Positions 313 to 47,451 of a DNA stretch of 64,000 nucleotides are shown here, piece by piece. The translations under genes and the position numbers were made by a program. Under the pieces are notes generated by a model. It was not told the DNA's origin and ran no database searches. It saw only the letters and a program-made list of their open reading frames with translations. The stretch is from positions 744,001 to 808,000 of the forward strand of contig JANJGN010000071.1 of NCBI GenBank assembly GCA_026770705.1. The letters run 5' to 3'. The stretch comes from Isurus oxyrinchus (lineage: Eukaryota). Within the stretch, counting starts at the first letter, position 1. Each line of letters starts with the position of its first letter.

Positions 313-460
313 ACACAATCACACACATTCACATTGACACGCACTGACAGTCACACATACACACACACACGCTGACACAATCACACACATTCACATTGAC
401 ACACACATATTGACAGTCACACACACACGCTCATAAAGACAGACACAAACACAGTCACGT
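120..460. repeat. Imperfect (CA)n microsatellite
   Basis: CA/CACT/GACA runs seen directly. Confidence 0.85.
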
Positions 461-635
461 GAGGTGAATAGTGTCGATGTATTTAAGGGGAAGCTGGATA
501 AACACACGAGGGAGAAATGAATAGAAGGATATGGTGATGGGGTGAGATGGAGAAGGGGTGGGCGGAGACTCGTGTGGAGCAGAAACTCCAGCATGGAACA
601 GATGGGCCGAATGGCTTCTTTCCCTGCTGTAAAAC
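460..635 (+). mobile_element. CR1-type LINE 3' end fragment
   Basis: gcatggaacagatgggccgaatggcttctttccctgctgt resembles the CR1 3' termini seen elsewhere in the window. Confidence 0.5.
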
Positions 636-759
636 GCAGGTAAAGATTCAGTTGGAATTAATGAACAGGGCCTGTGTGAAATAGATTGCTAAGCAGTAGA
701 TAAGGAGGGGAGAGGCTGTGGCATGGTGCAGGATGACCTTGCGTGAATGAGGCCAGGGT

Positions 760-876
760 CTAATATCTACAGCAGAGACCACAAGTCTCATTTGGTTCTC
801 TCCAATTACAGCAGTTACAGCAGAATCTGCAGAGCTGCTGTCTGCCCATTCTGTTCTGGCGCTGCAGCAAGGAGCC
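760..876 (-). CDS. hamp: Hepcidin-like gene, exon 3 (end of propeptide, RQNR convertase site, mature 8-Cys peptide)
   Basis: Acceptor ctgcttttccag|GGC at 876. Translation GSLLQRQNR-MGRQQLCRFCCNCCNWREPNETCGLCCRY*, with TAG at 762-760. The C-xx-CC-x-CC-(x)n-C-G-x-CC pattern after an RXXR site is the hepcidin signature. Confidence 0.9.
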   Translation of the reverse strand, partial: GSLLQRQNRMGRQQLCRFCCNCCNWREPNETCGLCCRY

Positions 877-959
877 CTGGAAAAGCAGGAGGACAATAGG
901 TGAGAACATTCCGGAAAGAAAGAAGGCATCATTTCAATCAGGCGCGTCATTGGAAGGAG

Positions 960-1340
960 GATGGCACATTTCCATAGCGCCTTTCCCCTCCTCAGGATGG
1001 CCCAAAGTGTTCCACAGCTGAAGGAAGGACTTTTTCTGAAGTGAGCTCACCGCTGTAATGTAGGAAACGCAGCAGGCAATTCACGCACAGCAAGATCCCA
1101 CAAACAGAAATGTGATAATGGCCCCGATTTTCAGTTTTTTACCAATGTCAGTTGAGGGATAAATGTTTGCCCCAGGAAAGCGGACATAACTCCACCCCAT
1201 CCAGCCCCCACCACCCCCTCCACACATACCCCCAACTCCTGACGCACTTCATTTAAATTGTGGCCATGGAATCCTCTACATCCATCTGAGAGGGCAGATC
1301 TTGTCTCAGTTTAACATCTCATCTGAAAGACAGCGCCTTC
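960..1340 (-). mobile_element. Deu-domain SINE (SacSINE1/AmnSINE-like)
   Basis: gcacagcaagatcccacaaac...gttgagggataaat core. Other copies lie at 3430-3720, 15770-16040 and 39905-40205. Confidence 0.6.
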
Positions 1341-1575
1341 AACAGTGCAGCACCCCCTCAGTATTGACCCTCCGACTGTGCAGCACTCCCTCAGTACTGA
1401 CCGTCTGACAATGCAGCACCCCCTCAGTACTGACCCTCCGACTGTGCAGTCCCCCGCCGGTACTGACCCTCTGACAGTGCAGCACTCCAAGACTGACCGT
1501 CTGACAATGCAGCACCCCCTCAGTACTGATCCTCCGACTGTCCTGCCCCCCCGCCGGTACTGACCCTCCGACAGC
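1340..1575. repeat. 33-bp minisatellite (CAGTACTGAGGGAGTGCTGCACTGTCAGAGGGT family)
   Basis: Tandem units seen directly, abutting the SINE 5' region. Confidence 0.9.
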
Positions 1576-1851
1576 TCGGTAATTTCTCAATTACGCCTGG
1601 TGGTCCTTTTAACTCAGAGCTGAGAGTTGCAGAGAATCGAGCAGACACCCTGAACTGACACTTGCAGTGCAAGTACTGGGAGTGCGCTGGTCATTATCAT
1701 GCTGCTGTCTGTGGGATCTTACAGTGCGCCAATGGCTGATTCTTTTCCCACAGTACATCAGTGACCTCACATGAAAGAAAACAAGCACTTGATTGTCTGC
1801 GAAACAGTTTGGGACGTCCTGATGTGTTGGAAGGCGCTAGAGAAATGCAAG

Positions 1852-2000
1852 AGTTGACGTTTCGAGTCCTCATGACCCTTCTGAGGACTCGAAACGTCAA
1901 CTCTTTTCTTCTCCGCCGATGCTGCCAGACCTGCTGAGTTTTTTCAGGTAATTCTGTTTTTGTTTTGGATTTCCAGCATCCGCAGTTTTCTTTGTTTTTA
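1852..2000 (+). mobile_element. Penelope-like element terminal fragment with inverted 5' end
   Basis: Short palindrome plus gatgctgccagacctgctgagtttt tail, flanked by a 14-bp direct repeat tagagaaatgcaag (~1838 and ~2001). Confidence 0.7.
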
Positions 2001-3266
2001 TAGAGAAATGCAAGTCCTCTTTGTCTTTCACTTGATCCTCTAAGGTGTCTGTTGATTAACCAGCCTCTCGGTGTATGATGTAGGCCTGGTTATAAACAGT
2101 TAGAAGGATCAAATATCAAAAGTGCTTTGGCTGACAGTCAAACCGATTGTGCATTCGGAGAGATTAGATACGGTCTGCGCACAATGACTCCAGTCTCTGG
2201 CACTGACTGCCGCCTGGGGTCTCCCTTCCACATAACACTCACAACTTGCATTTACACAGCGCCTCTGACATTGCAAAATGTCCCAGCCCACATTACCGGA
2301 GCATAAATCAGAGAGAAGTCTAACACTGAGTCACATATGGAGATATTAGGGATAGGTGACCAAAAGCTTGGTCAAAGATGTCAGTTTTTAAGGAGCGTCT
2401 TAAAGGAGAGAGAGAGAGAGAGGCAGAGAGGTTAAGGGAGGGTATTCCGGAGCTCAGGGCCCCAGGCAGCTGAAGGCACGGCCACCAATGGTGGAGCGAT
2501 GGGAATCAGGGGGACCCGGGAGATGCAGTAATGTCAGAGATTTTGGAGGAACATCGGGACCGGAGGAGGTGTTCTCCTGCTCCATATCTCTCTCTCTCTT
2601 CCTCTCTTCCACTCCTCCTCTCCCTGTCTCTCTCTCCTACTCTTCCTCTCAACTGCCCTCTCTCCCAATCTTTCTCTCCTCTCTCCCTTTTCCTGTCTCT
2701 CTCCCTCTCACTCCCCTGTCTCCTTCTCCCACTCTGTATCTCTCCCTCTCTCTCACACTATTTTTGTAACTTTCGCTCACTCTGTAACTCTCCCTTCCCT
2801 GTTAATTTCTCTCTCTTGGACAATCTCTCTTCCCTTTTCACTTTCCCTCACTCTGCATCTCTTTAATTTCTCCCTCTGTCACTCTCTCCCACCTATGTTC
2901 TTTCCCTTTCACCCCTCCCCGTCCCACTCTGTGTCTCTCCCTTCCAATCCCTCCCTCCCCCATTCCATCCCTCTCTCCGACTCTCGACTCCCAGCCTCTC
3001 TTTAACCCACTCCCAGGCTGGATCAGTCTCCCTCTCACTATTCCCGGCGTGGGTTACATTTAAAATTCCTGTGGGGATATGTTCACTTCCTTGGAATTGT
3101 CTCTTCCCAGCTTTGCAAAAAAGTTGGCGGGGGGGCTCGATTTCAAACCTGCCTCCTGAGTATAACCGAGACAGACTGCCACTGAAATCAGCTTGAAATC
3201 AGAAAACTTTCTGTGGAAGAAACGAGCAGGGAGAAACCTTAAAATAAGGAATGAATTTCCACCTAC

Positions 3267-3323
3267 CGTGTCCGGGGAATCCACAGATTTCTCAATCGTC
3301 GAAGAACCTAAAGCAGTGTCAAC
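3267..3323 (-). CDS. hamp: Hepcidin-like gene, exon 2 (propeptide, 57 nt)
   Basis: Acceptor ttctttctttttgcag| and donor ACG|gtaggt. Phase 0/0, reading VDTALGSSTIEKSVDSPDT in frame with exon 3. The size is close to the ~60-nt exon 2 of known hepcidins. Confidence 0.8.
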
Positions 3324-3429
3324 CTGCAAAAAGAAAGAATTTATCAGGGAGAAAGTGAGAGGAGGATTGAGGGAGAGGGAGAGAGAGAGAGAGAGGTACA
3401 GGAGAGAGAGGGGGAGGAGGACAGACTTG

Positions 3430-3950
3430 CATTTCTCTAACGCCTTTCACCACATCCCAAAGCATTTCACAGCCACTGAAGGATGTTTTTGAAGTGCACT
3501 CACACTGTAGGAAATGTGGCAGCTGATTTGTGCACAGCAAGATCCCACAAATAGCAATGTGATCATGGCCTAGATCATCTGTTTTTGGTGATGTTGGGTG
3601 AGGGATAAATATTGGTCCCAGGACACCGGGGAGAACACCCCCTGCTCTTCCTCCAAATAGTGGCTGTGGGATCTTTCACACCCGCCCGAGAGGGCAGACG
3701 GGGGACTCAGTTTAATGTCTCATTCAACATTGTTGTGCTCCCTCAGTACTAACCCTTTGACACTGCAGCACTCCCTCAGTACTGACCCTCCGACAGTGCA
3801 ACACTTCCACAGTACTGACCCTGTAACAATGCAGCACTTCCTCAGTACTGACCCTCCGACAGTATAGCACTCACTCAGTACTGTCCCTCCAATAGTGCAA
3901 CACTTCCACACTACTGACCCTCTGACAGTGCAGCACTCCCTCAGCACGGA
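3430..3950 (-). mobile_element. Deu-domain SINE plus 33-bp minisatellite
   Basis: Same SINE core as 960-1340, with the minisatellite at 3735-3950. Confidence 0.6.
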
Positions 3951-4009
3951 GTATTGACCTACGTTATGGGACTGAATTCCCTGGAGTGAGACTCAGACCA
4001 GAGATTTAG

Positions 4010-4790
4010 GTAGGGTTGTTCCGGCTGGAGGAGGTTACAGAGATAGGGAGGGTTGTAGAGGCTGTAGGAGGTAACTGAGATAGGGAGGATTCTAGAGGCT
4101 GTAGGAGGTTACAGAGATAGGGAGGGTTGTAGGGGCTGTAGGAGGTTACAGAGATAGGGAGGTGAGTAGGGGCTGTAGGAGGTTAAAGAGATGGGGGGGT
4201 TGTGGGGGCTGGAGGAGGTTACAGAGGTAGGGAGGGTTGTAGAGGCTGGAGGAGGTTACCAAAATAGATACTGTTGTAGGGGCCACAGTCGGTTACAGAG
4301 ATAGGGAGAGTTATAGTGTGGAGAGGACGTTATAGAGTTCATGAGCATTGTAGGGGCTGGAGGAGGTTACAGTGATTCTGAGGGTCGTGGGGCCTGGAGG
4401 AGGTTACAGAGATAGGGAGGGTTGTAGGGTCTGGAGGAGGTTACAGAGATAGGGAGGGTTGTAGGGGCTGGAGCAGGTTACAGAGATAGGGAGGGTTGTA
4501 GGGTCTAGAGGAGGTTACAGTGATCATGAGGGTTGTGGGGCCTGGGGGAGGTTACAGAGATAGGTAGGGTTGTAGGGGCTGGAGGAGGTAACAGAGATAG
4601 GGACAGTTGTAGGGGCTGGAGGAAGTTACAGAGATAGGGAGGGTTGTAGGAGCTGGAGGAGGTTACAGAGATAGGGAGGGTTGTAGGGGCTGGAGGAGGT
4701 TACAGAGATAGGGAGCGGTGTAGGGGCTGGAGGAGGTTACAGAGATAGGGAGGGTTGTAAGGCCTGGTGGACGTTACAGAGATAGGGAGT
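4010..4790. repeat. 37-bp minisatellite (GGAGGAGGTTACAGAGATAGGGAGGGTTGTAGGGGCT)
   Basis: About 20 tandem units inside hepcidin intron 1. Confidence 0.9.
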
Positions 4791-4991
4791 GGCTGAGGAG
4801 GGATTGAAAACAAGAATGAGAATTTCAGGGGAAACGACAGAAGGAAATGATGTTAAATTCATAGAGGGCGACAATATTAAAGGCACGAACATAATAATAT
4901 CAAACTGCGGAAGTGACCAGTCTATCTGGGTGGTAGATGTAGAGTCATGTGCAAGAAACACCTCACCCAGAGGGACATCTCTTAGCTTAAC

Positions 4992-5083
4992 CTCGACAAG
5001 GAGAAGAAGTGACTCAGCTGCAGGGAGAGCAGCAAAGTCAGAGTGAACAAGACAAGTCGCCATTTCATCTGGGAGCTTCCCAT
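4992..5083 (-). CDS. hamp: Hepcidin-like gene, exon 1 (signal peptide); donor apparently defective or out of phase
   Basis: gagATGG at 5083 gives MGSSQMKWRLVLFTLTLLLSLQLSHFFSLS, a basic n-region plus hydrophobic core. The only suitable GT (AG|gttaag) leaves 92 nt, phase 2, whereas exons 2 and 3 need phase 0. Confidence 0.7.
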
Positions 5084-5154
5084 CTCTGCCTGTCTCTTCT
5101 GATCTTCTGGCTCTGCTTTGATGCTTTGGTTTGTAACTAGAGGAGCTTCCTGCT

Positions 5155-5650
5155 CTTATACCTGAAACACTTGAAGGGGACAGCCGCGGGTGGGTAGCTG
5201 TGTGGTATCACACCCATTTCTGGATATTGCAGTGTCGATGTTCCCTGTCCCACTGGCCTGGGACCAGCAGTAAGGTCACTGGGACATTGACTGTCTGGCG
5301 CCGAGAACTATCAGTCCCTCCGCAACGCCCTTCACCTTGTGCAAATATGTGTTCATATTGATGCAACACAACATAGCAAAAACATAGGGGCTGGTTCTTA
5401 TGTCGGCAAATCAGGTGAAGCGCACGCCCCCTAACCCCTTACTCCTCTCATTGCTCCTCCTTCCTGCCAGACACTTACTATTTTACAAATTGTGTGCGTT
5501 GCTTTTATTTCGGACAAGGGGCCTCGAGGGGGAACTGATTTACGCTGAGGTTTAGGGGTTAACAGCCATGTCATGTGTTGATCGGTCAGTGTTTACCATG
5601 TGGAGACTGTCTGTCACCAGCTTTGTTAATGGTTTATCCAGGAACATTGA
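5155..5650 (-). promoter_or_regulatory. Putative hepcidin proximal promoter
   Basis: TATAAG at 5160-5155, 77 nt upstream of the ATG. GGCGCC at 5297-5302 followed by AGAC (Smad/BMP-RE-like). TTGTGCAA at ~5337 and TGATGCAA at ~5359 (C/EBP and C/EBP-ATF-like). GTTAATGGTTTAT at ~5625 (HNF1-like). Confidence 0.5.
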
Positions 5651-5759
5651 AGGGCATGAACGTTCTTGCTTTGTATGGAACAAGTTACCAACTGGGTTCA
5701 GTCATCGACTCAGACTCACATCAACATAAACTGGCTTCTGACAGGTAAGTTTCTATTAC

Positions 5760-6360
5760 ATAAGGGTAGGAGGAGGCCATTTGGCCCCTCGAGCCTGCTC
5801 CACCATTCAAAGAGTTCATGGCTGATCTGCAAACTAGCCCCATATGCCTTTGTCCCATCTCCTTTAATACCTTTGGATAACAAAAATCTATCAGTCTCAC
5901 AGGTTTAAAATGAACAACTTGATCGTGCATCAGTTTCAGTTTGGGGAAGACCGTTCCAAATTTCTCCCACCCTTTGTACTTCCTAATTTAATTCCTTTTT
6001 AGGCTCTGACCCCGAGTCCCAGACTCCCCCCAACCAGGGGAAATGGTTTCTCTTTATTGCCCCCAATCTGTTCCCCTTATTATCATGCAAACTTTCATCA
6101 AATCTCCTGCTTAACATTCTAACTTCCAGGGAATACAAGCCGAGTTTGTGTTTAATCTCTCCTTGTGATTTAACCCTTGGAGTCCCGGTCTCATTCTGGT
6201 AAACTGACACTGCTCTCCCTCCGAGGTCAATATATCCTTCCTAAGGTGTGGGGCCCAGAATGTCTCACAGTGACTCCAGGTGTGGTCTAGCCAGGGCTTT
6301 ATGTAGACTGAAGCATGACCTCTGCCCCCTTATATTCTAATCCGTGAGATAGAAAGGGCA
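5760..6360 (-). mobile_element. CR1 LINE 3' fragment
   Basis: Degenerate LGLYSLE..RL..D RT C-terminal motif (ORF 5983-6210) and the CR1 3' tail. Confidence 0.7.
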
Positions 6361-7439
6361 GAGTTCCAGAATTGTTGTGTTTATTCGACAACAGAATAAC
6401 AGAGGAAGGTTTCCTCTCTGCCCTCTTCAGCCCCACTGGGAAGGTCAGGATGAGAAGGTTGGGCTGGGTCCCCTGTACTGGACACTCGCTGAATCTTCCA
6501 ATGATAGTTCTGGGCTGGATTTCAAAACGCATAGACAAGGATTCAGTGTTCCATCACATTCTGCCTTTGTCTCTTTTCCTCTCGTTCTCTTTCTCTACCA
6601 TCCTCTCTCTCTATCTATCTATCTTTCTCCTCATTCTCTCCTGCTTCATCTCTATCACTTTCTTTCTACTTCTTTGTGTGTCTCTGTCTGTCTCTCTCTC
6701 TCACTCTTTCTTTCCTTGTCCTTATCTCTTTCAGTGTCTCCCTCTTTCTCTCTCTCTCTCTCTCTCTAAATGTGACCCTCTCTAACAGTTTGGCCCAGTA
6801 CTCTTATTTCCCTGTTTTACTGGTGTTCCATTTGAAGGTATACAAGACCAGATCAGACCAGAATGTTTATTTCCCAGTGTTTACTGTGTTTTTTTCATTC
6901 TGGGTGTCTCTCGACTCTGTCTGTCCCTCTCTGTCCTTTTATTTCATTCTTTCATGTGATGTGGACATCACTGCCCAGGCCAGCATTTATTGCCCAACCC
7001 GAATTGCCCTTGTTCAGAGGCCACTTTTTAAAAGTCAACCACATTGCTGTGGGTCTGGAGTCACATGTAGGCCAGACCAGGTAAGGACAGCAGATTTCCC
7101 TCCCTATAGGGCATTTGTGACCCAAATACAAGAATCGGCAATGGTTTCCTGGTCATCATCGGACTTTTAATTCCAGGTTTTTATTGAGTTCAAATTCCAC
7201 CAACTGCTGTGGTGGGATTCTAACCAGGGTCCCAGGAGCATTACACTGGGTCTCTGGATTACTGGTCCAGTGAAAATACCATCAGGCCAACACCTCCCCA
7301 CTCTTCCCTTCCTCCATCTTTCACACTTGTTCTGTCTCTCTCTCACTCTCCTTCTCTCTTCTCCCTCTCTCAGTCTCTGTCTGTCTCTCAATCTCTCTAT
7401 CGCTCTCTCTCTCCCTGTCGCTCTCTCTCTGACTGTCTC

Positions 7440-7950
7440 CCTCCCTATCTCTGTAACCTCCTCTCTCTGTCCTTTTCCTCCAGCCCCTACAACCCTCCCT
7501 ATCTCTGTAACCTCCACCAGCCCCTACAATCCTCCCCATCTCTGTAACCTCCTCCACCTCCCACAACCCTCCCTATATCTGTAACCTCCTCCACAAGCCC
7601 ATACAATCCTCCCTATCCCTGTAACAACCTCCAGCCCGACAACACCCCTATACATGTCACCTCCTCTAGCCACTGTAACCCTAATAATCTCCCAAGCCTC
7701 CACCAGCCTTGACAATCCTGCCCATCTCTGTAACATCCTCCAACCACCACAACCCTCCCTATTTCTGTAACCTCCTCCAGCCCCTACAACCCTCCCTATC
7801 TCTGCAACAGCTTCCAGCACCTACAACCCTCCCTATCTCTGTAACCTCCTCCAGCCCCTACAACACTCCTTATCTCTGTAACCTCCTCCAGCCCCTACAA
7901 CCCTCCCTATCTCTGTAACCTCCTCCAGCCCCTGTAACCCTCCCCATCTC
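7440..7950. repeat. 37-bp minisatellite (reverse orientation)
   Basis: ccctccctatctctgtaacctcctccagcccctacaa units. Confidence 0.9.
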
Positions 7951-8339
7951 TTGAAGGGTTCTCAAAATTTCCAACTGTCAAGGAACCCTGGGTTGGTGAG
8001 CGTGACCCCTGACCTCTCCTAGTGCAATTTAGTTAGGGTTTGGGGGATGGGACAAGGGTAAGGGCATTAGTAGCATGATTCTCCCTCGTTATGCCGTGTG
8101 TTCCCCATTCTTAACTCAGTGTACTTTGTAAGTCTGTATAATCTCAGTGTCATCCTAATGTTAGAAGTTCATTTGTGACTTCAGTAAACTCAGTTTTTGT
8201 CTTGCACCAAAACCAGTTGTCTGCTGCACTTTGTGACAAGCCCCGAATAAGTCCAAGGTCTAGAACCCAGGGAGTGGGAGCGATTCAGACGGCTCAGAAG
8301 TCGCAGGTGAAGCTGACACACACCACCACACCCTACAAG

Positions 8340-8830
8340 GGGCTGAATGGCCTCCTCCTGTTCCTGTGTAATGGGCATCAGTGGCTGAATGGCCTCCTCC
8401 TGTTCCTGTATAACGGACATAAGTGGCAGAATGGCCTCCTCTTGTTCCTGTGTAACGGACATAAGTGGCAGAATGGCCTCCTCCTGTTTCTGTGTAACAG
8501 TCTTGAGGGGGCTGAATGGCCTCCTCCTGTTCCTGTGTAACAGTCTCGAGGGGGCTGAATGGGCCTCCTCCAGTTCCTGTGTAACAGACATCAGTGGCTG
8601 AATGGGCTTGCTCCTGTTCCTGTGTAACAGGCTTGAGGGGGCTGAATGGCCTCCTCCTGTTCCTGTGTAACAGGCTCAAGGGGCTGAATGGCCTCCTCCT
8701 GTTCCTGTGTAACAGGCTCGAGGGGGCTGAATGGCCTCCTCCTGTTCCTGTGTAACAGGCTCAAGGGGCTGAATGGCCTCCTCCTGTTCCTGTGTAACAG
8801 GCTCGACGGGCTGAATGGCCTCCTTCTGCA
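8340..8830. repeat. ~42-bp minisatellite derived from the CR1 3' end
   Basis: gggctgaatggcctcctcctgttcctgtgtaacaggctc units. Confidence 0.85.
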
Positions 8831-8849
8831 CTGTAAACTTGTTGTGATA

Positions 8850-9085
8850 CTGTAACTGCCTCTTTGGTTTCATTCAGCTGAATCTTCAGCTCTTCAGTCT
8901 CTTCCTTGTATCTCTTGCCTTCCTCCTGGAACATTGGACATGGTTGGGTCTTCCCTGCCAACTGTTTCTTCAGTTTGCTCAGAGCGGCACAGAATTCGCT
9001 TTCTTTCTCTTCAGGATTTTCCAGTGGAACCAACTCTGACCTGAGGGACACTTGCAGCCTGTGAGGATGCTTCAATTCTTCAAAC
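8850..9085 (-). pseudogene. Coiled-coil coding fragment, possibly UACA/RAI14/ANKRD24-like
   Basis: FEELKH...SELVPLENPEEKESEFCAALSKLKKQLA...EETEELKIQLNETKEA is heptad-like. The family assignment is from memory only. Confidence 0.35.
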
Positions 9086-10199
9086 TCATTCCGAGATACA
9101 CTCTCATATTCCCCCAGCAACTCAGCAACTCCTCCAGTGAAACATTTCAGAGCAGCTGAGCTTGGTTTTCTGGAACCAGTCTCGGCCCAGAAGACTAGGG
9201 CCCTCACCTGTCGCTATGATCACTGGAAGCTGGGCTGTCTGCTGCCTGTAGGACACAGGTACTGGGATGAGGTCCTTTCCCTGTATGGATTCTCCAGTGT
9301 GTGTCTTCAGCTGATCCATTGTTGGCTCTAAATTCAGCGTCTGGGTTCCTTCATTTAGCTGTTTAAATGTGGGCTCTTCCACCACTGTGTCTGAGGCTCC
9401 CGTATCTGCCCCATTACTAGTGGCTGCCCATTCACTTGGGTTGTGATGGTTATAGGTTCAGTTTTTAGCACTGTGACATTGGACAGGGAATAGACATCGG
9501 TATCAGCAGCTTCAGGCTCTGTGATATTATTCACTTCCATCATGTTGGTGCACTGCCTGATGGGCTGTCTCGATTTCACCCTGCATTGCTTTATTACCCG
9601 CCCCTTTCTTGTGGCAGTGATGGCATTCTGCTCCCTTGAACCTGCAGGTGTCCGGTACGTGCTCAATGCCCCCCACATCGAGAACAGGCCAACTTCGGAG
9701 TTGCTGCTGAAATACTCCCACGAAGCCTTTTAGTTTCTGGAGCGGCAGATACTGTCTCTCGCTTGGCGGCTGTCTCTCTCTCTCTCTCTCTCTCTCCAGT
9801 TTGAGCCTCACGCCCGGTGGTTGGTTCCTGTCCCAGCTGAGGACTGGTGCCATGTTGTACATCCTGTAAATCCCGCCAGTCTCTCCCAGCATTTTCCATG
9901 CCTGGCGCTATTTCCATGGTGCGCTTCAAATCGATGTCGGCTTCTGCGAGTAAACGGCTCTGAATGGCGTTGGGGTGAACGACACAAACCAATCGGCCCC
10001 GCAACATGTCATTGAGTGTGTCTCCGAGGTCCCAGTGCTCAGTCACCTGCTTCCACTTCACTGTATAGGTTGCGATGGACTCTCCCGGGGCCCTTACTCT
10101 GGAGTTAAACTTAAACATTTTCATTATTACCCACGGCTTCAGCTGAAAACACATCTTCATGAGGTCGACTAATTGGTGAAAAGATTTAGAATTGGGTGC
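9085..10199 (-). mobile_element. Gypsy LTR-retrotransposon internal fragment (gag, zinc knuckle, protease), frameshifted
   Basis: FKFNSRVRAPGESIATY, LNDMLRGRLVC, CSRCGG-H/CHHCHKKG knuckles and GEGPSLLGRDW. Confidence 0.85.
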
Positions 10200-11353
10200 A
10201 ATACACGTCACTGTCTTCAGCTCTGAGACTGTCAATCCTCACCAAACAATTCTTCCCTTCCAATTCGCCGATTATTTTAGCACGTCCCACGAATGTGGCT
10301 ATCGCATAATTGGGATCTTTGGTGTATGTGATGGTATATTTCCATCTATACCAATATTTATACCAAGCTCCGTGCAGTGCTGTGTAAGAGTGGGAAGGAA
10401 AGTCAAAGCTACACGGAATAACCACACAAGAGCTGCTGATGGCCCTCCGAGGCAGCGCCTTCATAGACCATCCCTCTGACGTCACTCCTGAAAGGCAACA
10501 AGGGAAGAGACAGGACATCAAAAAGCAGAATATTACTTCAATGGAGAGAGTCTACAGAATGCGGTACAGAGGGATCTGGGTGTCCATGCACATGAATCAC
10601 AGAAAGTCAGCATTCAGGAACACCACGGAATGAGGAAGGCAAGTGGAATGTTGGCCTTTATTGCAAAGGGATGGAGTATAAAAGGAGGGGAGTCTTGCTA
10701 CAACTGTACAGGGCGTTGGTGAGATTGTATCAGGAGCAGTGTGTACAGTTCTGGTCTCCTTACTTAGGGAGGGATAGACTCTGCATTGGAGGCAGTTCAG
10801 AGGAGGATCACTGGGCTGATTCCTGGGATGAAGGGGGTTTGTCTTATGAGGAAATGTTGAGCAGGTTGGGCCCTGTATCCATTGGAGTTTAGAAGAATGA
10901 GAGGTGATCTTATTGAAACATATAAGATTCTGAGGTGGTGGGGGGTTTGACAGGGTGGATGCTGAGGGGATGTTACCCCTTGTGGGGGAATCCTGTGAAG
11001 CAATAAGGATGTTTTACTGCATTAAAGGTGCTATATAAATGCACTGTCATTCCTATTGAAACAAGCTCTCTGCTGCACAAACAGAAAATGCTGGAAAAAC
11101 TCAGCAGGTCTGACAGCATCTGTGGAGAGAGAAACAGAGTTGGTGTTTCGAGTCCATATGAGGCTTTTTCTTTTGCTAAATTCTCTGACTCGCTAATCAC
11201 TCACTCTCTGTGTGATCACTAACCCTGTTCTCTAAAATTAAATGTTCACTTCCTCACTCCAGGAAAGAATCCAATTCCCTGAGTTCCGATCAGTAATGAA
11301 TTTGTACCTTGCAGCAAGCTGATGCAGATCAATATCAGACCGACCTCTCCCAT
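10186..11353 (-). pseudogene. Siglec-like leader (11353-11308) and V-set exon (10487-~10199), truncated by Gypsy sequence
   Basis: Leader MGEVGLILICISLLQG|gt is phase 1. V exon VTSEGWSM..SCVVIPCSFDFP..W..GRAKIIGELEGKNCLVRIDSLRAEDSDVY shows the Siglec Cys pattern and stops before the F-strand Arg. Confidence 0.85.
10530..10990 (+). mobile_element. CR1 LINE fragment in the leader-V intron
   Basis: LQLYRALVR..CVQFWSPYL motif (ORF 10671-10892). Confidence 0.8.
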
Positions 11354-11619
11354 CTTCAGTTCCTCATCTAAATGGAAATGATAAAGACAGAGACTTTTTC
11401 AGAAATTGTCCCTAGCGTTTCTTCCTCAAACAACAACTTGTGTTTAAATGGCACCTTTCAGGGAATTAAACAGCCCCAGGGAATAAACTAACGTCAAGAC
11501 AAGGAAGGAGAGATTGAGAAGGGACATCGCAAACTGATTCACCAAACACAGCAAAAATTCATTGTTCCCTCACTCCCTGTGCTGGGTGTCCAGCTTTTTC
11601 TCTCAGTGAGTTTAGCCCT

Positions 11620-13300
11620 CACAATCTGTCTCTATCACACTCTTCTGCTCTATCTCTCTCTCTCACACACACATTCTCTCTCTAACACTCACAATCTCTC
11701 TCTATCACACTCTTCTGCTCTATCTCTCTCTCTCTCTCACACACACACATTCTCTCTCTAACACTCACAATCTCTCTCTATCGCACTCTTCTGCTCTATC
11801 TCTCTCTCTCAAACACACTCATTCTCTCTCTAACACTCACATTCTCTCTCTATCGCACTCTTCTGCTCTATCTCTCTCTCTCTCACACACATTCTCTCTC
11901 TAACACTCACAATCTCTCTCTATCACACTCCTCTGCTCTATCTCACTCTCTCTCAGACACACGTTCTCTCTCTAACACTCACAATCTCTCTCTATCGCAC
12001 TCTTCTGCTCTATCTCTCTCTCTCAAACACACTCATTCTCTCTCTAACACTCACAATCTCTCTCTATCACACTCTTCTGCTCTATCTCTCTCTCACACAC
12101 ACACATTCTCTCTCTAACACTCACAATCTCTCTCTATCACACTCTTCTGCTCTATCTCTCTCTCTCACACACACACATTCTCTCTCTAACACTCACAATC
12201 TCTCTCTATCGCACTCTTCTGCTCTATCTCTCTCTCTCACACACACACATTCTCTGTCTAACACTCACAATCTCTCTCTATCGCACTCCTCTGCTCGATC
12301 TCTCTCTCACACACACACATTCTCTCTCTAACACTCACATTCTCTCTCTAACAATCACAATCTCTCTCTATCACACTCTTCTGCTCTATCTCTCTCTCTC
12401 TCACACACACACATTCTCTCTCTAACAAACACAATCTCTCTCTATCGCACTCTTCTGCTCTCTCTCTCTCTCACACACACACACACATTCTCTCTCTAAC
12501 ACTCACAATCTCTCTCTATCGCACTCTTCTGCTCTATCTCTCTCTCTCACACACATATTGTCTCTCTAACACTCACAATCTCTCTCTATCACACTCTTCT
12601 GCTCTATCTCTCTCTCTCTCACACACACATATTCTCTCTCTAACACTCACAATCTCTCTCTATCACACTCTTCTGCTCTATCTCTCTCTCTCTCACACAC
12701 ACATATTCTCTCTCTAACACTCACAATCTCTCTCTATCGCACTCTTCTGCTCTATCTCTCTCACACACACACATTCTCTCTCTAACACTCACAATCTCTC
12801 TCTATCACCCTCTTCTGCTCTATCTCTCTCTCTCACACACACACATTCTCTCTCTAACACTCACAATCTCTCTCTATCGCACTCTACTGCTCTATCTCTC
12901 TCTCTCTCTCTCACACACATTCTCTCTCTAACACTCACAATCCGTCTCTGTCGCACTCTTCTGCTCTATCTCTCTCACACACATATTCTCTCTCTAACAC
13001 TCACAATCTCTCTCTATCACACTCTTCTGCTCTATCTCTCTCTCTCTCACACACATTCTCTCTCTAACACTCACAATCTCTCTCTATCGCACTCTACTGC
13101 TCTATCTCTCTCTCTCTCTCACACACATTCTCTCTCTAACACTCACAATCCCTCTCTATCACACTCTTCTGCTCTATCTCTCTCTCACACACACACACAT
13201 TCTCTCTCTAACACTCACAATCCCTCTCTGTCGCACTCTTCTGCTCTATCTCTCTCTCACACACACACATTCTCTCTCAGACACTCACAATCTCTCTCTC
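11620..13300. repeat. Compound CT/CA satellite with a ~62-bp higher-order unit
   Basis: Recurring unit ctaacactcacaatctctctctatcacactcttctgctctatc(tc)n(ac)natt. Confidence 0.9.
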
Positions 13301-17413: not shown

Positions 17414-18116
17414 ATGTGTAGGCACATACATGCACATTTACACACAGTCATACACGTGCAAAAACCTACACAGAAACATACACACACTCAACTCACACAC
17501 ACACACTCACACGTGCACACACATACACATACACATGTACACACATTCACTTATGCACAGAAATATACACAAAGACACACGCACATTTGCGCAAACACAT
17601 ACACACATGCACACACAGACACATGCATGCATACTCACACAAACATACTCACATATGTAGAAACACAAACACATAAACATAAACACGCGTGAGGTCCCTC
17701 TTCTCTCTCAGGGCTGCACTGGAGTCTCGGTGTCAGCTCCGATTCTGTGTTGAAGGAAGGTAAACTCCAGATCAACAAGACCCTGAACTGGATGAGCAAC
17801 CTCCTGAACAGAGAATTGTAGATTTACCCCTCAGTGTTCCATCGATCAAATACAATTCATTCCCGTAAATCCCTTGGCAAAATCCTGAGGATGTGAAAGT
17901 TTCTTTCATTCTAGGTGAACAGCACCTCTACTGGTGGGAGAATGTAACTCCAGTTTGACTGTTTACATAGGCAGTGTCCATTATAAATTTGACAGTGGAA
18001 TTTATATGGAGGGAAGGTATCTGGAAATGCATACAGACATCAGATACAGAGAGATGATGCATGGAGTCTTGCTGTGCACGCTGCTTGCTCACATTAAACA
18101 CTTGATTTGTTCTTAG

Positions 18117-18398
18117 ATGCTCCACAGAATCTCACATTTACTTCTCTTGAAATGATTAATGCTTCATCGATCAATATAATTGAGGGGAATTCTGCAGTGA
18201 TAATCTGCTCTGTCGAGAGCTTCCCAGCTTCTAACCTGACGTGGCGACATCTTAATGTCCCAATGAACAGAACAAGTTCCAACAATGAGCTGTGGTTGGT
18301 GATTCCTCACGTTACATCCAGGGACACTGGAGACTATCAGTGTGTGGCAGAGAATGAACATGGAGCAGTGGAGGGGTTCATAACCATCACTGTGGAAC
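18117..18398 (+). CDS. Siglec-like inhibitory receptor, C2-set Ig exon (copy 1)
   Basis: ttcttag|AT...GAAC|gtgagt, 282 nt, phase 1/1. Reads APQNLTF..IEGNSAVIICSVESFPASNLTW..DTGDYQCVAENEHG. Confidence 0.88.
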
Positions 18399-19160
18399 GT
18401 GAGTGTACACAGACTTCAACATCACTCACACACACACACTCACACATGCAAAAACACTCATGTGTAGACACAAACATGCACGCTTACACACAAACATACG
18501 TTCAAACACATACACAGAAACACACACAAACTCAACTCANNNNNNNNNNNNNNNNNNNNNNNNNNNNNNNNNNNNNNNNNNNNNNNNNNNNNNNNNNNNN
18601 NNNNNNNNNNNNNNNNNNNNNNNNNNNNNNNNNNNNNNNNNNNNNNNNNNNNNNNNNNNNNNNNNNNNNNNNNNACAGACACGCGCATAAACACAAATAC
18701 AAACTCACGTGCAGAAGTACACACACAAGTGTGAGCTCCCTCTCCTCTCTCAGTTCTGCACTGGAGTCATGGTATCAGCTCCCATTCTGTGCTGAAGGAA
18801 GGTAAACTCCAGATCAGCAAGACCCTGAATTGGATGAGCAACCTCCTGAACAGAGAAATGTAGATTTAGCCCTCAGTGCTCCATCGATCAAATACAATTC
18901 ATTGCCTATCAAGCCCTTGGGGACATCTTGAGAGTGTTAAAGGATGTTTCTTTCATTCTAGAGGGTTAGCAACTCTACTGGTGGGAGGAAGCAACTGCAG
19001 TGTGACAGTTTACATAGGAAGTGTCCATTATAAATATGACAGTAATTTTTCCTGAGGGAAGGTACCTGGAAAAGCATTCCAACATCAGATACAGAGAGAT
19101 GATGCATGGAGTCTTGCTGTGCACTATGCTTGCTCACATTAAAATCTTTATTTCTTTTAG

Positions 19161-19441
19161 ACGCACCCAGAATCTCTCAATTAATTCTCTTGATATGATT
19201 AACGCTTCATCGATCAATATAATTGAGGGGAATTCTGCAGTGATAATCTGCTCTGTCGAGAGCTTCCCAGCTTCTAACCTGACGTGGCGACATCTTAATG
19301 TCCCAATGAACAGAACCAGTTCCAACAATGAGCTGTGGTTGGTGATTCCTCACGTTACATCCAGAGACACTGGAGACTATCAGTGTGTGGCAGAGAATGA
19401 ACATGGAGCAGTGGAGGGGTTCATAACCATCACTGTGGAAC
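19161..19441 (+). pseudogene. C2-set Ig exon (copy 2) with a 1-nt deletion
   Basis: 281 nt. ACGCACC-CAGAAT versus ...CCACAGAAT in paralogues. Read in phase 1 it reaches TGA at the 13th codon. Confidence 0.8.
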
Positions 19442-20262
19442 GTGAGTTANNNNNNNNNNNNNNNNNNNNNNNNNNNNNNNNNNNNNNNNNNNNNNNNNNN
19501 NNNNNNNNNNNNNNNNNNNNNNNNNNNNNNNNNNNNNNNNNNNNNNNNNNNNNNNNNNNNNNNNNNNNNNNNNNNNNNNNNNNNNCACACATGCATAATT
19601 ATCCACACACAGTCATACACATAGAAGCACATACACAGAAAAATACACACCCATCTCAAACACACACACACATTCATGCCCACACATAGACACACACATG
19701 CACATACTCTCACTCATGGACAGACCTAGACACACAGACACATGCGCATGCGCACACACAGACACATGTGTGCATACACACACAAACACATTCACATGTG
19801 CAGAAACACAAACACACAGATACACACACGTGAGTTCCCTGTCCTCTCTCAGTGCCGCACTGGAGTCTTGGTATCAGCTCCGATTCTGTGTTGAAGGAAG
19901 GTAAACTCCAGATCAACAAGACCCTGAATTGGATGAGCAACCTCCTGAACAGAGAATTGTAGATTTACCCCTCAGTGCTCCATCAATCAAATACAATTCA
20001 TTGCCTGTCCAGCCCTTTGCGAAATCCTGAGGATGTGAAAGCAAGCTTCTTTCATTCTAGATGGACAACACCTCTACTGGTGGGAGAATGCAACTGCAGT
20101 GTGACAGTTTACATAGGCAGTGTCCATTAAAAATGTGGCATAAGACGTTATCCTGAGGGAAGTTACCTGGAAATGCATTCAGACATCAGATACAGAGAGA
20201 TGATGCATGGAGTCTTGCTGTGCAATAGGTTTGCTCACATTAAACACTTGATTTGTTTTTAG

Positions 20263-20544
20263 ATGCACCACAGGATCTCTCATTTACTTCGCTTAATATG
20301 ATTTACGCTTCATCAATCAATATAATTGAGGGGAATTCTGCAGTGATAATCTGCTCTGTCGAGAGCTTCCCAGCTTCTAACCTGACGTGGCGACATCTTA
20401 ATGTCCCAATGAACAGAACAAGTTCCAACAATGAGCTGTGGTTGGTGATTCCTCACGTTACATCCATGGACACTGGAGACTATCAGTGTGTGGCAGAGAA
20501 TGAACATGGAGCAGTGGAGGGGTCCATAACCATCACTGTGGAAC
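20263..20544 (+). CDS. Siglec-like inhibitory receptor, C2-set Ig exon (copy 3)
   Basis: tttttag|AT...GAAC|gtgagt, 282 nt, intact, with both Ig cysteines. Confidence 0.88.
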
Positions 20545-30661: not shown

Positions 30662-30692
<31 letters not shown>

Positions 30693-31060
30693 GCAGAAGA
30701 GTGCGATAGAGAGAGATTGTGAGTGTTAGAGAGAGAATGTGTGTGTGTGAGAGAGAGAGAGAGAGATAGAGCAGAAGAGTGTGATAGAGAGAGATTGTGA
30801 GTGTTAGAGAGAGAATGTGTGTGTGTGTGAGAGAGAGAGATAGAGCAGAAGAGTGTGATAGAGAGAGATTGTGTTTGTTAGAGAGAGAATGTGTGTGTGA
30901 GAGGGAGAGATAGAGCAGAAGAGTGCGATAGAGAGAGATTGTGAGTGTTAGAGAGAGAATGTGAGTGTGAGAGAGAGAGATAGAGCAGAAGAGTGCGATA
31001 GAGAGAGATTGTGAGTGTTAGAGAGAGAGATAGAGCAGAAGAGTGTGATAGATAGAGATT
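29720..31060. repeat. Compound GA/GT satellite (~62-bp unit)
   Basis: Reverse complement of the array at 11620-13300. Confidence 0.9.
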
Positions 31061-38366: not shown

Positions 38367-40364
38367 ATGGGAAGCTCCCAGATGAAATGGCGACTTGTCT
38401 TGTTCACTCTGACTTTGCTGCTCTCCCTGCAGCTGAGTCACTTCTTCTCCTTGTCGAGGTTAAGCTAAGAGATGTCCCTCTGGGTGAGGTGTTTCTTGCA
38501 CATGACTCTACGTCTACCACCCAGATAGACTGGTCTCTTCCGCAGTTTGATATTATTATGTTCGTGCCTTTAATATTGTCGCCCTCTATGAATTTAACAT
38601 CATTTCCTTCTGTCATTTCCCCTGAAATTCTCATTCTTGTTTTCAATCCCTCCTCAGCAACTCCCTATCTCTGTAACCTCCTCCAGCCCCTACACCCCTC
38701 CCTATCTCTGTAACCTCCTCCAGCCCGTACAACCCTCCCTATCTCTGTAAACTCCTCCAGCCCCTACAACCCTCCCTATCTCTGTTACCTCCACCAGGCC
38801 TTACAACCCTCCCTATCTCTGTAACCTCTTCCAGCCCCTACACCCCTCCCTATCTATGTAACCTCCTACAGTCCCCACAACACTCCCTATCTCTGTAACC
38901 TCCCCCAGGCCCCACAACCCTCACGATCACTGTAACCTCCTCCAGACCCTACAACCCTCCCTATCTCTGTAACCTGCTCCAGACCCTACAACCCTCCCTA
39001 TCTCTGTAACCTGCTCCAGACCCTACAACCCTCCCTATCTCTGTAAAGTCCTCCAGGCCCCACAACCCTCACAATCACTGTAACCTCCTCCAGCCCCTAC
39101 AATCCTCCTGAACTCTATAACCTCCTCTCCACACTATAACTCTCCCTATCTCTGTAACCTACTGTGGCCCCTACAGCAGTGTCTATTTTGGTAACCTCCT
39201 CCAGCCTCTACAACCCTCCCTACATCTGTAACCTCCTCCAGCCCCCACAACCACCCCATCTCTGTAACCTCCTACAGCCCCTACACACCTCCCTACCTCT
39301 GTAACCTCCTCCAGCCCCCACAACTCCCCCATCTCTGTAACCTCCTACAGCCTCTACAACCCTCCCTATCTCTGTAACTTCCTACAGCCCTTACAACCCT
39401 CCCTATCTCTGTAACCTCCTACAGCCTCTACAGCCCTCCCTATTTCTGTAACCTCTTCCAGCCCCTACAACCCTCCCTATCTCTGTAACCTCCTACAGCC
39501 TCTACAACCCTCCCTATCTCTGTAACTTCCTACAGCCCTTACAACCCTCCCTTTCTCTGTAACCTCCTACAGCACCCACAACCCTACCTAAATCACTGGT
39601 CTGAGTCTCACTCCAGGGAATTCAGTCCCATAATGTAGATCAACGCTCCGTGCTGAGGGAGTGCTGCAATCTCAGAGGGTCAGTAGTGTGGAAGTGTTGC
39701 ACTATTGGAGGGACAGTACTGAGGGAGTGCTATACTGTCGGAGGTCAGTACTGAGGGAGTGCTGCAGTGTCAAAGGGTTAGTACTGAGGGAGCGATGCAC
39801 TGACGGAGGGACAATACTGTGGGAGTGCAGCACTATCGAAGGGTTAGTACTGAGCGAGTGCTGCAGTGTCAAAGGGTTAGTACTGAGGGAGCGCAACAAT
39901 GTTGAATGAGACATTAAACTGAGTCCCCCGTCTGCCCTCTCGGGCGGGTGTGAAAGATCCCACAGCCACTATTTGGAGGAAGAGCAGGGGGTGTTCTCCC
40001 CGGTGTCCTGGGACCAATATTTATCCCTCAACCAACATCACCAAAAACAGATGATCTAGGCCATGATCACATTGCTATTTGTGGGATCTTGCTGTGCACA
40101 AATCAGCTGCCACATTTCCTACAGTGTGAGTGCACTTCAAAAACATCCTTCAGTGGCTGTGAAATGCTTTGGGATGTGGTGAAAGGCGTTAGAGAAATGC
40201 AAGTCTGTCCTCCTCCCCCTCTCTCTCCTGTACCTCTCTCTCTCTCTCTCTCCCTCTCCCTCAATCCTCCTCTCACTTTCTCCCTGATAAATTCTTTCTT
40301 TTTGCAGGTTGACACTGCTTCAGGTTCTTCGACGATTGAGAAATCTGTGGATTCCCCGGACACG
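38367..40364 (+). pseudogene. hamp: Truncated hepcidin duplicate (exon 1 38367-38458, exon 2 40308-40364, no exon 3 found)
   Basis: Same signal-peptide exon and VDTASGSSTIEKSVDSPDT exon. Homology stops at ~41250, short of exon 3. Confidence 0.75.
38660..39590. repeat. 37-bp minisatellite (reverse orientation)
   Basis: Mirror of 4010-4790. Confidence 0.9.
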
Positions 40365-47077: not shown

Positions 47078-47451
47078 CAGAAACGTCAAGCTGGGTTACA
47101 GGATACTAGCTGTAACTATTCCTGCTGTCAAACTCTATTCTGAAAAAATAAGGTCCTGCATCTTCCCGTCTGATGTTGTTTATAATCAGGGAACAGTCGC
47201 CATCTTTCTGGTCTCCAGACAGCCGGGTCCGATGGCGGAATCTTTGATCCCTGTGACTGTGACCCTCGGAGTGAAAGGCTATAGACCATTTAGGCTGTGG
47301 GTTCCCATCTATTCCTTTCAACCAGATTCCGCACGTGATCTCCCTACGAAATTTGATAAGTAACTGGAATGACATGGAATCGGTACACATGAACCTTCCT
47401 GTGCTGTCACCTCTCGTGGAGTGTCACCTTTCCACTCTTGTGACAGTCCAA
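47078..47451 (-). pseudogene. Siglec V-set exon with a frameshift and a nonsense codon
   Basis: EVTAQEGSCVPIPCH../GIWLK..FRHRTRLSGDQKDGDCSLIINNIRREDAGPYFFRIEFD. The essential Arg is present, but there is a frameshift at ~47330 and TAG at 47108-47106. Splice sites ccccag| and |gtaagt. Confidence 0.9.

What the first reader, a model, noticed from the sequence alone, without database searches (positions are those of the whole stretch)
760..5083. Hidden three-exon hepcidin-like gene inside a probable shark Siglec cluster
Seen: three short minus-strand exons, each too small for the ORF track, encode a signal peptide, a 19-aa pro-segment and GSLLQRQNR/MGRQQLCRFCCNCCNWREPNETCGLCCRY*. This gives an 83-88 aa precursor if exon 1 joins in phase 0. 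Known: hepcidins are 3-exon prepropeptides of ~84 aa with an RXXR site and this 8-Cys pattern, and mammalian HAMP lies beside the Siglec genes MAG and CD22. Inference: this is a chondrichthyan hepcidin that keeps an ancient HAMP-Siglec linkage and is easy for annotation to miss. I cannot verify whether it has already been described.
Basis: partly seen in the sequence, partly recalled or inferred. Interest (0 to 1): 0.92.

Follow-up and report, generated by a model that had tools for sequence, protein, structure and literature searches.

The report
Shark long-loop hepcidin copy, flawed donor
This is a real three-exon gene copy of the hepcidin family (small cysteine-rich liver peptides of iron control and defence) lying among Siglec immune-receptor genes, but this copy has a changed letter at its first splice site and the abundant RNA seems to come from sister copies, so it is probably a silent duplicate.

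Summary
Exon 3 (876..760, minus strand) passes Pfam's Hepcidin cut-off (30.1 bits against 27). It carries the only hepcidin 8-Cys pattern in the window. The joined message gives an 88-aa prepropeptide.

Three points qualify the reading.
- Exon 1 ends at 4991, so intron 1 of this copy starts TT (AGG|TTAAGC) where GT is needed. The only nearby GT gives a frameshift.
- At 3'-UTR site 646 the RNA carries another letter in 99.7-100% of depth. All nine intron-2 pieces listed differ from the window by 1-4%. The RNA therefore comes mainly from sister copies.
- The peptide is a long-loop type without the His-bearing N-terminus. The same RNA runs also hold a typical type (..SHLSICMYCC) that is not encoded in this window.

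A truncated inverted duplicate (exons 1-2 only, same TT) lies at 38367-40364. Siglec-like V-set and C2 exons flank both copies.

This scan has already reported the same gene type many times elsewhere in this genome, including other copies with the flawed donor. This is a new member of a known family and of moderate interest.

The parts
5293..5302 (-). GGCGCCAGAC motif (BMP-responsive-element-like GGCGCC plus a SMAD box), 219 nt upstream of the ATG
   Evidence: The only GGCGCC sites in the 64 kb are this one and its duplicate at 38148-38157. One independent occurrence is about what chance gives for the window (1.48 expected); only its place is suggestive. Function is inferred, not tested.
5155..5160 (-). 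TATA box (TATAAG), 77 nt upstream of the ATG
   Evidence: RNA depth rises inside bin 5119-5250.
4991..5083 (-). Exon 1 coding part, 93 nt and 31 codons: start codon and hydrophobic signal peptide, ending ..TCG AGG
   Evidence: One search gives the translation. The joint 3323|4991 in X1 (9 contigs) and X2 (2 contigs) fixes the exon end at 4991.
3324..4990 (-). Intron 1. It begins TT (AGG|TTAAGC) and ends AG, so it has a non-canonical donor in this copy. It holds a tandem array of about 37-nt units at about 4000-4800.
   Evidence: 1667 nt skipped, ends CT..AA on the + strand, both=1. The other register would be GT..CA, so neither register is canonical. Sequence.
3267..3323 (-). Exon 2, 57 nt, 19-aa pro-segment
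   Evidence: joints on both sides.
877..3266 (-). Intron 2, canonical GT..AG
   Evidence: joint 875|3266 read with the cut +1, CT..AC on the + strand.
1931..2085 (-). Minor cassette exon (155 nt, shifts the frame) taken from a repeat inside intron 2
   Evidence: joints 875|1930 and 2084|3266, both CT..AC with cut +1, one X1 contig each, low depth.
760..876 (-). Exon 3 coding part: end of the pro-region, overlapping furin-type sites RQNR and RMGR, the 8-Cys mature peptide with an 8-residue loop holding an N-E-T sequon, and the stop at 762-760
450..759 (-). 3' UTR, at least to about 560 and perhaps further. It runs into a dispersed repeat from about 625 downwards. Marker site 646.
   Evidence: depth bins 450-771 are as deep as the exons. 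At 646 the window has A and the RNA has T in 99.7% (X1) and 100% (X2) of depth. Sequence.
38367..38459 (+). Exon 1 of the truncated inverted duplicate (copy 2), identical to copy 1, with the same AGG|TTAAGC donor
40308..40364 (+). Exon 2 of copy 2 (56 of 57 identical; TTA becomes TCA, Leu to Ser). No exon 3 follows in the window.
   Evidence: Homology to copy 1 stops at 40683 (= 2949 in copy 1), inside intron 2.
2949..13164 (.). Left arm of the inverted duplication. Its partner is 29555-40683. Unique sequence around the hepcidin promoter and exons is 99-100% identical between the arms.
10186..10521 (-). Siglec-like V-set exon (duplicate at 32090-32497, + strand)
   Evidence: best PDB hits are sialoadhesin 3.6e-10, MAG 2.7e-08 and Siglec-5 1.3e-07; weak Pfam V-set match.
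47106..47390 (-). Siglec-like V-set exon with the YFFRIE motif (the sialic-acid-binding arginine position)
   Evidence: V-set 33.8 bits and a weak Ig_CD22 match; sialoadhesin, Siglec-10, Siglec-8, CD33 and MAG among the hits.

Best explanation
Window 5083..760 (minus strand) is a copy of a shark-type hepcidin gene of the 'long-loop' kind. It is one unit of a family spread by segmental duplication together with Siglec-like genes.

The message seen in RNA joins three exons and encodes an 88-aa prepropeptide. The likely steps are:
- Signal peptidase removes the N-terminal leader.
- A furin-type convertase cuts after RQNR, or after the overlapping RMGR.
- This releases a 29-aa or 26-aa peptide with eight cysteines. 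By analogy with solved hepcidins it would form a disulfide-laddered hairpin.

The hairpin loop has 8 residues instead of 4-5 and carries an N-glycosylation sequon. The N-terminus lacks the x-S/T-H motif. The peptide probably serves defence, like teleost Hamp2, rather than ferroportin control.

This particular copy has T instead of G at the first base of intron 1. Its truncated inverted duplicate has the same change. Copy-specific markers show that almost all RNA comes from sister copies. This copy is therefore most likely a recently disabled or silent duplicate that makes little or no peptide.

Shown: family membership, exon junctions, the TT donor in the assembly, the mismatch of the markers. 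Inferred: processing, fold, function, inactivity of this copy.
For: - Pfam Hepcidin 30.1 bits against a cut-off of 27. The nearest solved chain is bass hepcidin 1s6w, with the core CRFCCNCC and the C-terminal CG.CCR shared and 4 extra loop residues. The 8-Cys pattern occurs once in six frames.
- Joints 876|3267 (GT..AG) and 3323|4991, and exon depth 100-1000 times intron depth, in X1 and X2.
- The joint at 4991 leaves TT as the intron start. The context AGG|TTAAGC matches the donor consensus AGG|GTAAG at every position but +1. The neighbouring GT at 4991-4990 would give a 92-nt exon 1 and a stop after five codons of exon 2 (read). No joint 3323|4992 is among those listed.
- At site 646 the window has A. 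The RNA has T in 516255 of 517945 depth (X1) and 121567 of 121567 (X2).
- All nine intron-2 contig pieces listed differ from the window by 1-4% (tables 3 and 8).
- Copies 1 and 2 are 99-100% identical in unique sequence and share the TT.
- A typical-type transcript (..QNRM then SHLSICMYCC) shares 876..847 and then diverges. It is not encoded in the window.
- In sea bass the Hamp1 type (QSHLSLC..) regulates ferroportin and the Hamp2 type does not (PMC5665920).
Against: - The RNA runs may come from a different animal than the assembly. Site 646 and the intron differences could then be polymorphism rather than paralogy.
- Read laying lists only a subset of its rows (51 other-letter rows and 300 joints were not shown). 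Contigs matching this copy exactly, or a frameshifted 3323|4992 joint, may exist unseen.
- I could not see the donor of the expressed copies, so a GT there is inferred.
- If most copies carry TT while the in-frame joint is abundant, the TT..AG intron might really be spliced, or the T might be a recurrent assembly error.
- No function was tested. The peptide keeps six residues before the first Cys, with Leu-6 and Phe-9, so some ferroportin activity is not excluded.
Confidence: 0.6

Rival explanations
1. This copy is a working gene. Either the T at intron position +1 is an assembly or base-calling error, or the TT..AG intron is spliced accurately in vivo. On this reading the copy contributes to the very abundant long-loop hepcidin RNA.
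For: All three exons are open, with good acceptors, a TATA box and a Kozak-like ATG. The RNA joint is exactly the in-frame one, and exons 1-3 in RNA match the window with no listed differences. Earlier notes of this scan report the same odd donor in several other copies. That could mean it is tolerated, or is a systematic artefact.
Against: A donor with T at +1 is not a recognised class of functional splice site (established knowledge of U2-type introns: GT-AG, GC-AG, AT-AC). The same T stands in two independently assembled arms. 3'-UTR marker 646 and all listed intron-2 contigs disagree with this copy.
Confidence: 0.25
2. This is the animal's iron-regulatory hepcidin, the HAMP orthologue in function. 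It would act on ferroportin as in mammals and as teleost Hamp1 does.
For: Hepcidin family member with a BMP-RE-like GGCGCC in the promoter. It lies next to Siglec-like genes, as human HAMP lies next to MAG and CD22 (own knowledge; the locus with USF2 and the FFAR genes is described in PMC4453067). Six residues precede the first Cys, as in hepcidin-25.
Against: The N-terminus has no x-S/T-H motif and has Gln where Phe or Leu sits at position 4. The loop is doubled in length and has a glycosylation sequon. A transcript with the typical N-terminus (SHLSIC..) exists in the same RNA runs. This copy has a flawed donor.
Confidence: 0.07
3. Not a hepcidin: a chance Cys-rich reading frame, or a member of another small disulfide-rich family.
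For: The query is short. phmmer against the PDB gives only E 0.26 for bass hepcidin. The exhaustive HMMER search returned only spurious repeat proteins. The single-sequence AlphaFold model was helical and of low confidence.
Against: Pfam Hepcidin is above its curated cut-off and no other family matched at E up to 10. Cysteine spacing outside the loop is exact. An RXXR site stands directly upstream. The three-exon layout with a signal peptide is confirmed by spliced RNA.
Confidence: 0.01

Closest known systems
Teleost Hamp2-type hepcidin (for example sea bass or hybrid striped bass hepcidin, PDB 1s6w; PMC5665920)
   Same: Core CRFCCNCC and C-terminal CG.CCR+aromatic, eight cysteines, an RXXR site upstream, a three-exon prepropeptide, no His-3 motif, and multi-copy genes beside one typical type.
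   Different: The loop has 8 residues rather than 5, with an N-E-T sequon. The N-terminal six residues are unrelated. The family is embedded in a Siglec-like array. This copy has a TT donor.
Human hepcidin-25 (HAMP) and teleost Hamp1
   Same: Pfam family, eight-Cys framework, six residues before the first Cys, about 84-90 aa precursor in three exons, a GGCGCC motif in the proximal promoter, and Siglec genes (MAG, CD22) as neighbours in human.
   Different: It lacks the x-S/T-H (ATCUN) start and the hydrophobic position 4 used for ferroportin binding. The loop is twice as long. A separate transcript in the same species carries the typical start.
Sister copies in this same genome reported earlier by this scan (for example s1-864172, s1-868577, s1-869575)
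   Same: Same long-loop peptide type, same Siglec neighbourhood, and in several copies the same flawed first donor.
   Different: This report adds the truncated inverted duplicate in the same window, the marker evidence that this copy is not the expressed one, and the typical-type transcript.

Membership tests
Hepcidin (Pfam PF06446) | Score at or above the curated gathering score of the family model | tested here: met
   30.1 bits against 27, E 6.2e-07, model positions 24-52 of 53.
Hepcidin (Pfam PF06446) | Eight cysteines spaced C-x2-CC-x-CC-loop-C-x2-CC | tested here: met
   Present once in six frames of the window. The loop is 8 residues instead of the usual 4-5.
Hepcidin (Pfam PF06446) | Three-exon prepropeptide of about 84-90 aa with an N-terminal signal peptide | tested here: met
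   RNA joints 4991|3323 and 3267|876 give 88 aa. The leader has a basic start and a 12-residue hydrophobic core. No signal-peptide predictor was available.
Hepcidin (Pfam PF06446) | Proprotein-convertase site RXXR directly before the mature peptide | tested here: met
   RQNR, and overlapping it RMGR, 6 and 3 residues before the first Cys. Cleavage itself was not tested.
Hepcidin (Pfam PF06446) | Disulfide-laddered beta-hairpin fold | tested here: inconclusive
   AlphaFold2 without an alignment gave a helical model, pLDDT 68, pTM 0.36. It is not informative for a disulfide-rich 38-mer.
Iron-regulatory hepcidin (HAMP / Hamp1 function) | N-terminal ferroportin-binding segment with x-S/T-H and a hydrophobic position 4 | tested here: not met
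   The window peptide starts M-G-R-Q-Q-L-C. Sea bass Hamp1 starts QSHLSLC (PMC5665920). A typical start, SHLSIC, is seen only in a different transcript.
Iron-regulatory hepcidin (HAMP / Hamp1 function) | Liver expression induced by iron/BMP and by inflammation | not testable with these tools
   The tissues of the runs are coded. Only a GGCGCCAGAC motif at -219 was seen.
Functional gene copy | Canonical splice signals at every intron | tested here: not met
   Intron 2 is GT..AG. Intron 1 is TT..AG in this copy and in copy 2.
Functional gene copy | Transcripts that carry this copy's own sequence markers | tested here: not met
   Site 646: the window letter holds at most 0.3% of depth in X1 and 0 in X2. 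All nine listed intron-2 pieces differ from the window by 1-4%. Only a subset of rows is shown, so low-level expression is not excluded.
Siglec (neighbouring genes) | N-terminal V-set domain of the Siglec type with the conserved arginine (..YFFR.E) | tested here: met
   Exon 47106-47390 has YFFRIE; V-set 33.8 bits. PDB hits include sialoadhesin, Siglec-10, Siglec-8, CD33 and MAG. For exon 10186-10521 the best hits are sialoadhesin 3.6e-10 and MAG 2.7e-08.
Siglec (neighbouring genes) | Orthology to MAG or CD22 (needed for the 'ancient HAMP-MAG-CD22 linkage' claim) | not tested
   Only single exons could be searched. No tree was built. No USF2 or FFAR genes were looked for beyond noting that the window has no GPCR-length open frame.

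The most novel reading that the evidence does not exclude
Sharks have, independently of teleosts, a two-type hepcidin system. One is a typical His-bearing hormone type. The other is a strongly transcribed, amplified long-loop type that may be N-glycosylated. The long-loop type is spread with Siglec genes by segmental duplication, inside a HAMP-Siglec linkage group that dates to the jawed-vertebrate ancestor. Many units, like this one, decay through a shared donor mutation.
Probability: 0.4. Interest if true: 0.6.

Novelty: new member of a known kind. Interest (0 to 1): 0.35.

Why it matters
Hepcidin is the master iron hormone of vertebrates, yet I found no dedicated description of it in cartilaginous fish in the held library. 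The one exception is a listing in a nurse-shark plasma proteome, where it had no whale-shark orthologue in the annotation (PMC9207270). A shark family with a typical and a long-loop type next to Siglec genes would push the hormone/defence split and the HAMP-Siglec linkage back to early jawed vertebrates.

This window teaches a narrower lesson. An open three-exon model plus abundant RNA does not show that a given copy works. The donor letter and the copy-specific markers say that this copy probably does not.

Tried and rejected
- The search for homologous proteins with the stop-free stretch 933..763 (region 18-57): no candidate shared enough words, so no relatives and no annotation status.
- The search of protein representatives with the 38-aa exon-3 peptide: three hits, all long repetitive proteins unrelated to hepcidin. 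The query is too short for a library of 1.8 billion proteins.
Sister copies could not be fetched and their donors could not be read.
- The joined three-exon protein was not searched or folded. All searches were exon by exon.
- AlphaFold2 on exon 3 alone gave a low-confidence helical model. I did not take it to a fold search.
- A second exon 3 for copy 2 was sought by tblastn and with two 30-nt patterns at up to 3 mismatches: none in the window.
- A 1-nt deletion in exon 1 was my first reading of the phase problem. I dropped it in favour of a G-to-T change at intron +1, because AGG|TTAAGC fits the donor consensus everywhere else.
- Rfam at gathering scores over the whole window: no match.
- Papers: no characterisation of shark hepcidin was found. 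The nurse-shark paper's supplement does not mention hepcidin.
The Siglec-like exons just downstream of it lie on the opposite strand.
Full report
**What is in the sequence**

- Exon 3 runs from 876, behind a pyrimidine-rich ..ttttccag acceptor, to the stop at 762-760.
- Exon 2 is 3323..3267, 57 nt and 19 aa, between ..ttttgcag and gtaggt.
- Exon 1 starts at the ATG at 5083 in a good context (purine at -3, G at +4). It encodes a leader with a basic start and a 12-residue hydrophobic core.
- A TATA box lies 77 nt upstream of the ATG.

**Is it more than chance?**

The 38-aa exon-3 peptide scores 30.1 bits (E 6.2e-07) on Pfam Hepcidin, above the curated cut-off of 27, and no other family appears at E up to 10. 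Even multiplied by the roughly 1350 stop-free segments of 30 aa or more in the window, this stays near 8e-4. The hepcidin cysteine pattern occurs once in all six frames. The closest solved chain is bass hepcidin 1s6w. The alignment shares the core CRFCCNCC and the C-terminal CG.CCR and places four extra residues in the loop.

**RNA evidence**

One search for runs and one laying of contigs were allowed. Runs X1 and X2 come from one sample of organism A. They are labelled 'RNA?' by guess only, but they behave as RNA. Exon bins reach 1.7e5 to 8e5 in depth, while unique intron bins stay at a few hundred to about 1500.

The joint 876|3267 is present in 9 and 5 contigs, with CT..AC on the + strand, which is GT..AG on the gene strand. 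The joint 3323|4991 is present in 9 and 2 contigs. The message therefore reads ..TCG AGG | GTT GAC.., and exon 1 is 93 nt. The reading frame runs through all three exons for 31+19+38 = 88 aa, or 83 from the second ATG. I did not search or fold the joined protein.

**The flaw at the first donor**

With the exon ending at 4991, the intron in this assembly begins TT. The skipped part 3324..4990 has the ends CT..AA on the + strand. The only other register that fits gives GT..CA, so neither register is canonical.

The context AGG|TTAAGC matches the usual donor AGG|GTAAG at every position except +1. I therefore read it as a G-to-T change at the first intron base. Earlier notes of this scan on sister copies suggested this reading, which replaced my first idea of a 1-nt deletion. 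The neighbouring GT at 4991-4990 would give a 92-nt exon 1, a frameshift and a stop after five codons of exon 2. No phase-0 GT or GC exists before the in-frame stop two codons into the intron (read). The frameshifted joint 3323|4992 is not among the listed joints, though 300 joints were not shown.

**Whose RNA is it?**

The exons in RNA match the window, but copy-specific sites do not.
- At 3'-UTR site 646 the window has A. The RNA has T in 516255 of 517945 depth in X1 and in all of 121567 in X2.
- All nine intron-2 pieces listed (five from X1, four from X2) differ from the window by 1-4% (tables 3 and 8).
- X1 and X2 also show different variants at the same intron sites.
- Junction variants exist: first codon of exon 2 GTT or GGT, and last codon ACG or ATG.

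So several near-identical genes are transcribed, and this copy is at most a very minor contributor. The caveats are that the RNA animal may differ from the assembled one and that the tool prints only a subset of its rows.

**A second, typical hepcidin type**

In X1 a contig shares 876..847 and then leaves the window sequence. Read in frame, it continues ..QNRM with S-H-L-S-I-C-M-Y-C-C (loose end at 847). In X2 a contig joins 847 to 763 across an unknown stretch. Its depth (6460) is almost the same as that of the junction variant ending ..GACATG (6521), so these are probably one transcript.

That N-terminus is the x-S-H-L-S-I/L-C start of the iron-regulatory type; sea bass Hamp1 is QSHLSLC.. 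(PMC5665920). Neither this sequence nor a second copy of the exon-3 start is in the window.

**The peptide of this window**

After RQNR the mature peptide (window:763-849:-) has 29 residues and a net charge of about +2.
- An overlapping RMGR site could instead give a 26-mer with only three residues before the first Cys.
- Six residues precede the first Cys, as in hepcidin-25. Leu-6, Cys-7 and Phe-9 are kept. Positions 2-5 are G-R-Q-Q instead of S-H-L-S.
- The loop between the CC pair and the next Cys has 8 residues, with an N-E-T sequon.

By analogy with teleosts, where Hamp1 but not Hamp2 regulates ferroportin (PMC5665920), I infer a defence-type role. Nothing here tests that.

**The duplicate**

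Exon 1 (identical, same TT) and exon 2 (56 of 57) recur on the + strand at 38367-38459 and 40308-40364. They belong to an inverted duplication with arms 2949-13164 and 29555-40683. Unique sequence around the promoter and exons is 99-100% identical between the arms; the apparent divergence sits in tandem arrays. Homology stops inside intron 2 at 40683, where a satellite-like array begins, and no exon 3 follows. Earlier notes report that similar truncated copies elsewhere splice onto Siglec tail exons. I could not test that here. The nearest downstream Siglec-like exons are on the opposite strand.

**Neighbourhood**

Siglec-like exons flank both copies.
- A V-set exon lies at 10186-10521 (minus strand), with its duplicate at 32090-32497. 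Its best PDB hits are sialoadhesin 3.6e-10, MAG 2.7e-08 and Siglec-5/7/8.
- A V-set exon with YFFRIE lies at 47106-47390.
- C2-type Ig exons lie at 18107, 19021 and 20253 (+ strand) and at 55873 (minus strand).

So 'inside a Siglec-like cluster' is right. Human HAMP lies beside MAG and CD22 (my own knowledge), and the locus with USF2 and the FFAR genes is described in PMC4453067. Orthology of these shark genes to MAG or CD22 was not tested, and no GPCR-length frame is in the window.

**Promoter note**

GGCGCCAGAC, a GGCGCC BMP-responsive-element core followed by a SMAD box, lies 219 nt upstream of each ATG. These are the only two GGCGCC sites in the window. One independent occurrence is about what chance gives for 64 kb, so only its position is suggestive.

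**Known or new**

The held library has no dedicated paper on shark hepcidin. A nurse-shark plasma proteome lists hepcidin among proteins with no whale-shark orthologue (PMC9207270), which fits a gene that annotation tends to miss. Within this scan the same gene type has been reported many times on other DNA of this genome, including copies with the same flawed donor.

**Verdict**

This is a real hepcidin-family gene copy in a Siglec-like array, of a diverged long-loop type. It is probably itself disabled by a donor mutation, while sister copies and a typical-type paralogue are expressed.

Noticed in passing
window 847 (RNA only; not encoded in the window): A transcript in X1 and X2 shares exon-3 bases 876..847 and then reads S-H-L-S-I-C-M-Y-C-C. 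This is a typical His-bearing hepcidin N-terminus, so the species has a second, classical hepcidin type elsewhere in the genome.
   Followed up: partly
window 38367-40683 (+): Truncated inverted duplicate of the hepcidin gene: promoter, exon 1 and exon 2 only. The breakpoint is in intron 2, where a satellite-like array of about 37-nt units starts. What its exon 2 splices to is unknown.
   Followed up: partly
window 1850-2085: A perfect 23-nt hairpin (1850-1872 / 1882-1904) lies beside a repeat that is extremely deep in all four runs, including two of another species. Part of that repeat (1931-2085) is used as a minor frame-shifting cassette exon. No Rfam family matches.
   Followed up: partly
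window 10186-10521 (-) and 32090-32497 (+): The Siglec-like V-set exon ends ..DSDVYCTQF and a stop, just where Siglecs have YFFR.E. Open frames that look like parts of a mobile element follow directly (9663-10235 and 32448-32963; no Pfam match). This looks like an insertion that truncates the V exon in both arms.
   Followed up: no
window 18107-20810 (+): Three nearly identical C2-type Ig exons in tandem (18107, 19021, 20253). Two of them are followed at once by N-masked stretches. This may be exon triplication or an assembly collapse or expansion.
   Followed up: no
window 5293-5302 (-) and 38148-38157 (+): GGCGCCAGAC, a BMP-responsive-element-like motif, stands 219 nt upstream of both hepcidin start codons. 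These are the only GGCGCC sites in the window.
   Followed up: partly
window 877|3269 joint in run X5 (organism B): A related species also shows the exon 2-exon 3 junction, in the ..GACATG variant, at low depth. The gene structure is therefore shared beyond one species.
   Followed up: no
window 43415-44254 (+) and 62818-63657 (-): Another inverted pair of near-identical units with 141-aa and 129-aa open frames (..LEYCVQFWSP.., LINE-tail-like).
   Followed up: no
window 4000-4800, 7439-7951, 34548-36291: Long tandem arrays of a unit of about 37 nt (..ctccctatctctgtaacctcctccagcccctacaaccc..) lie in hepcidin intron 1 and upstream of both copies. They account for most of the apparent divergence between the two arms.
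   Followed up: no
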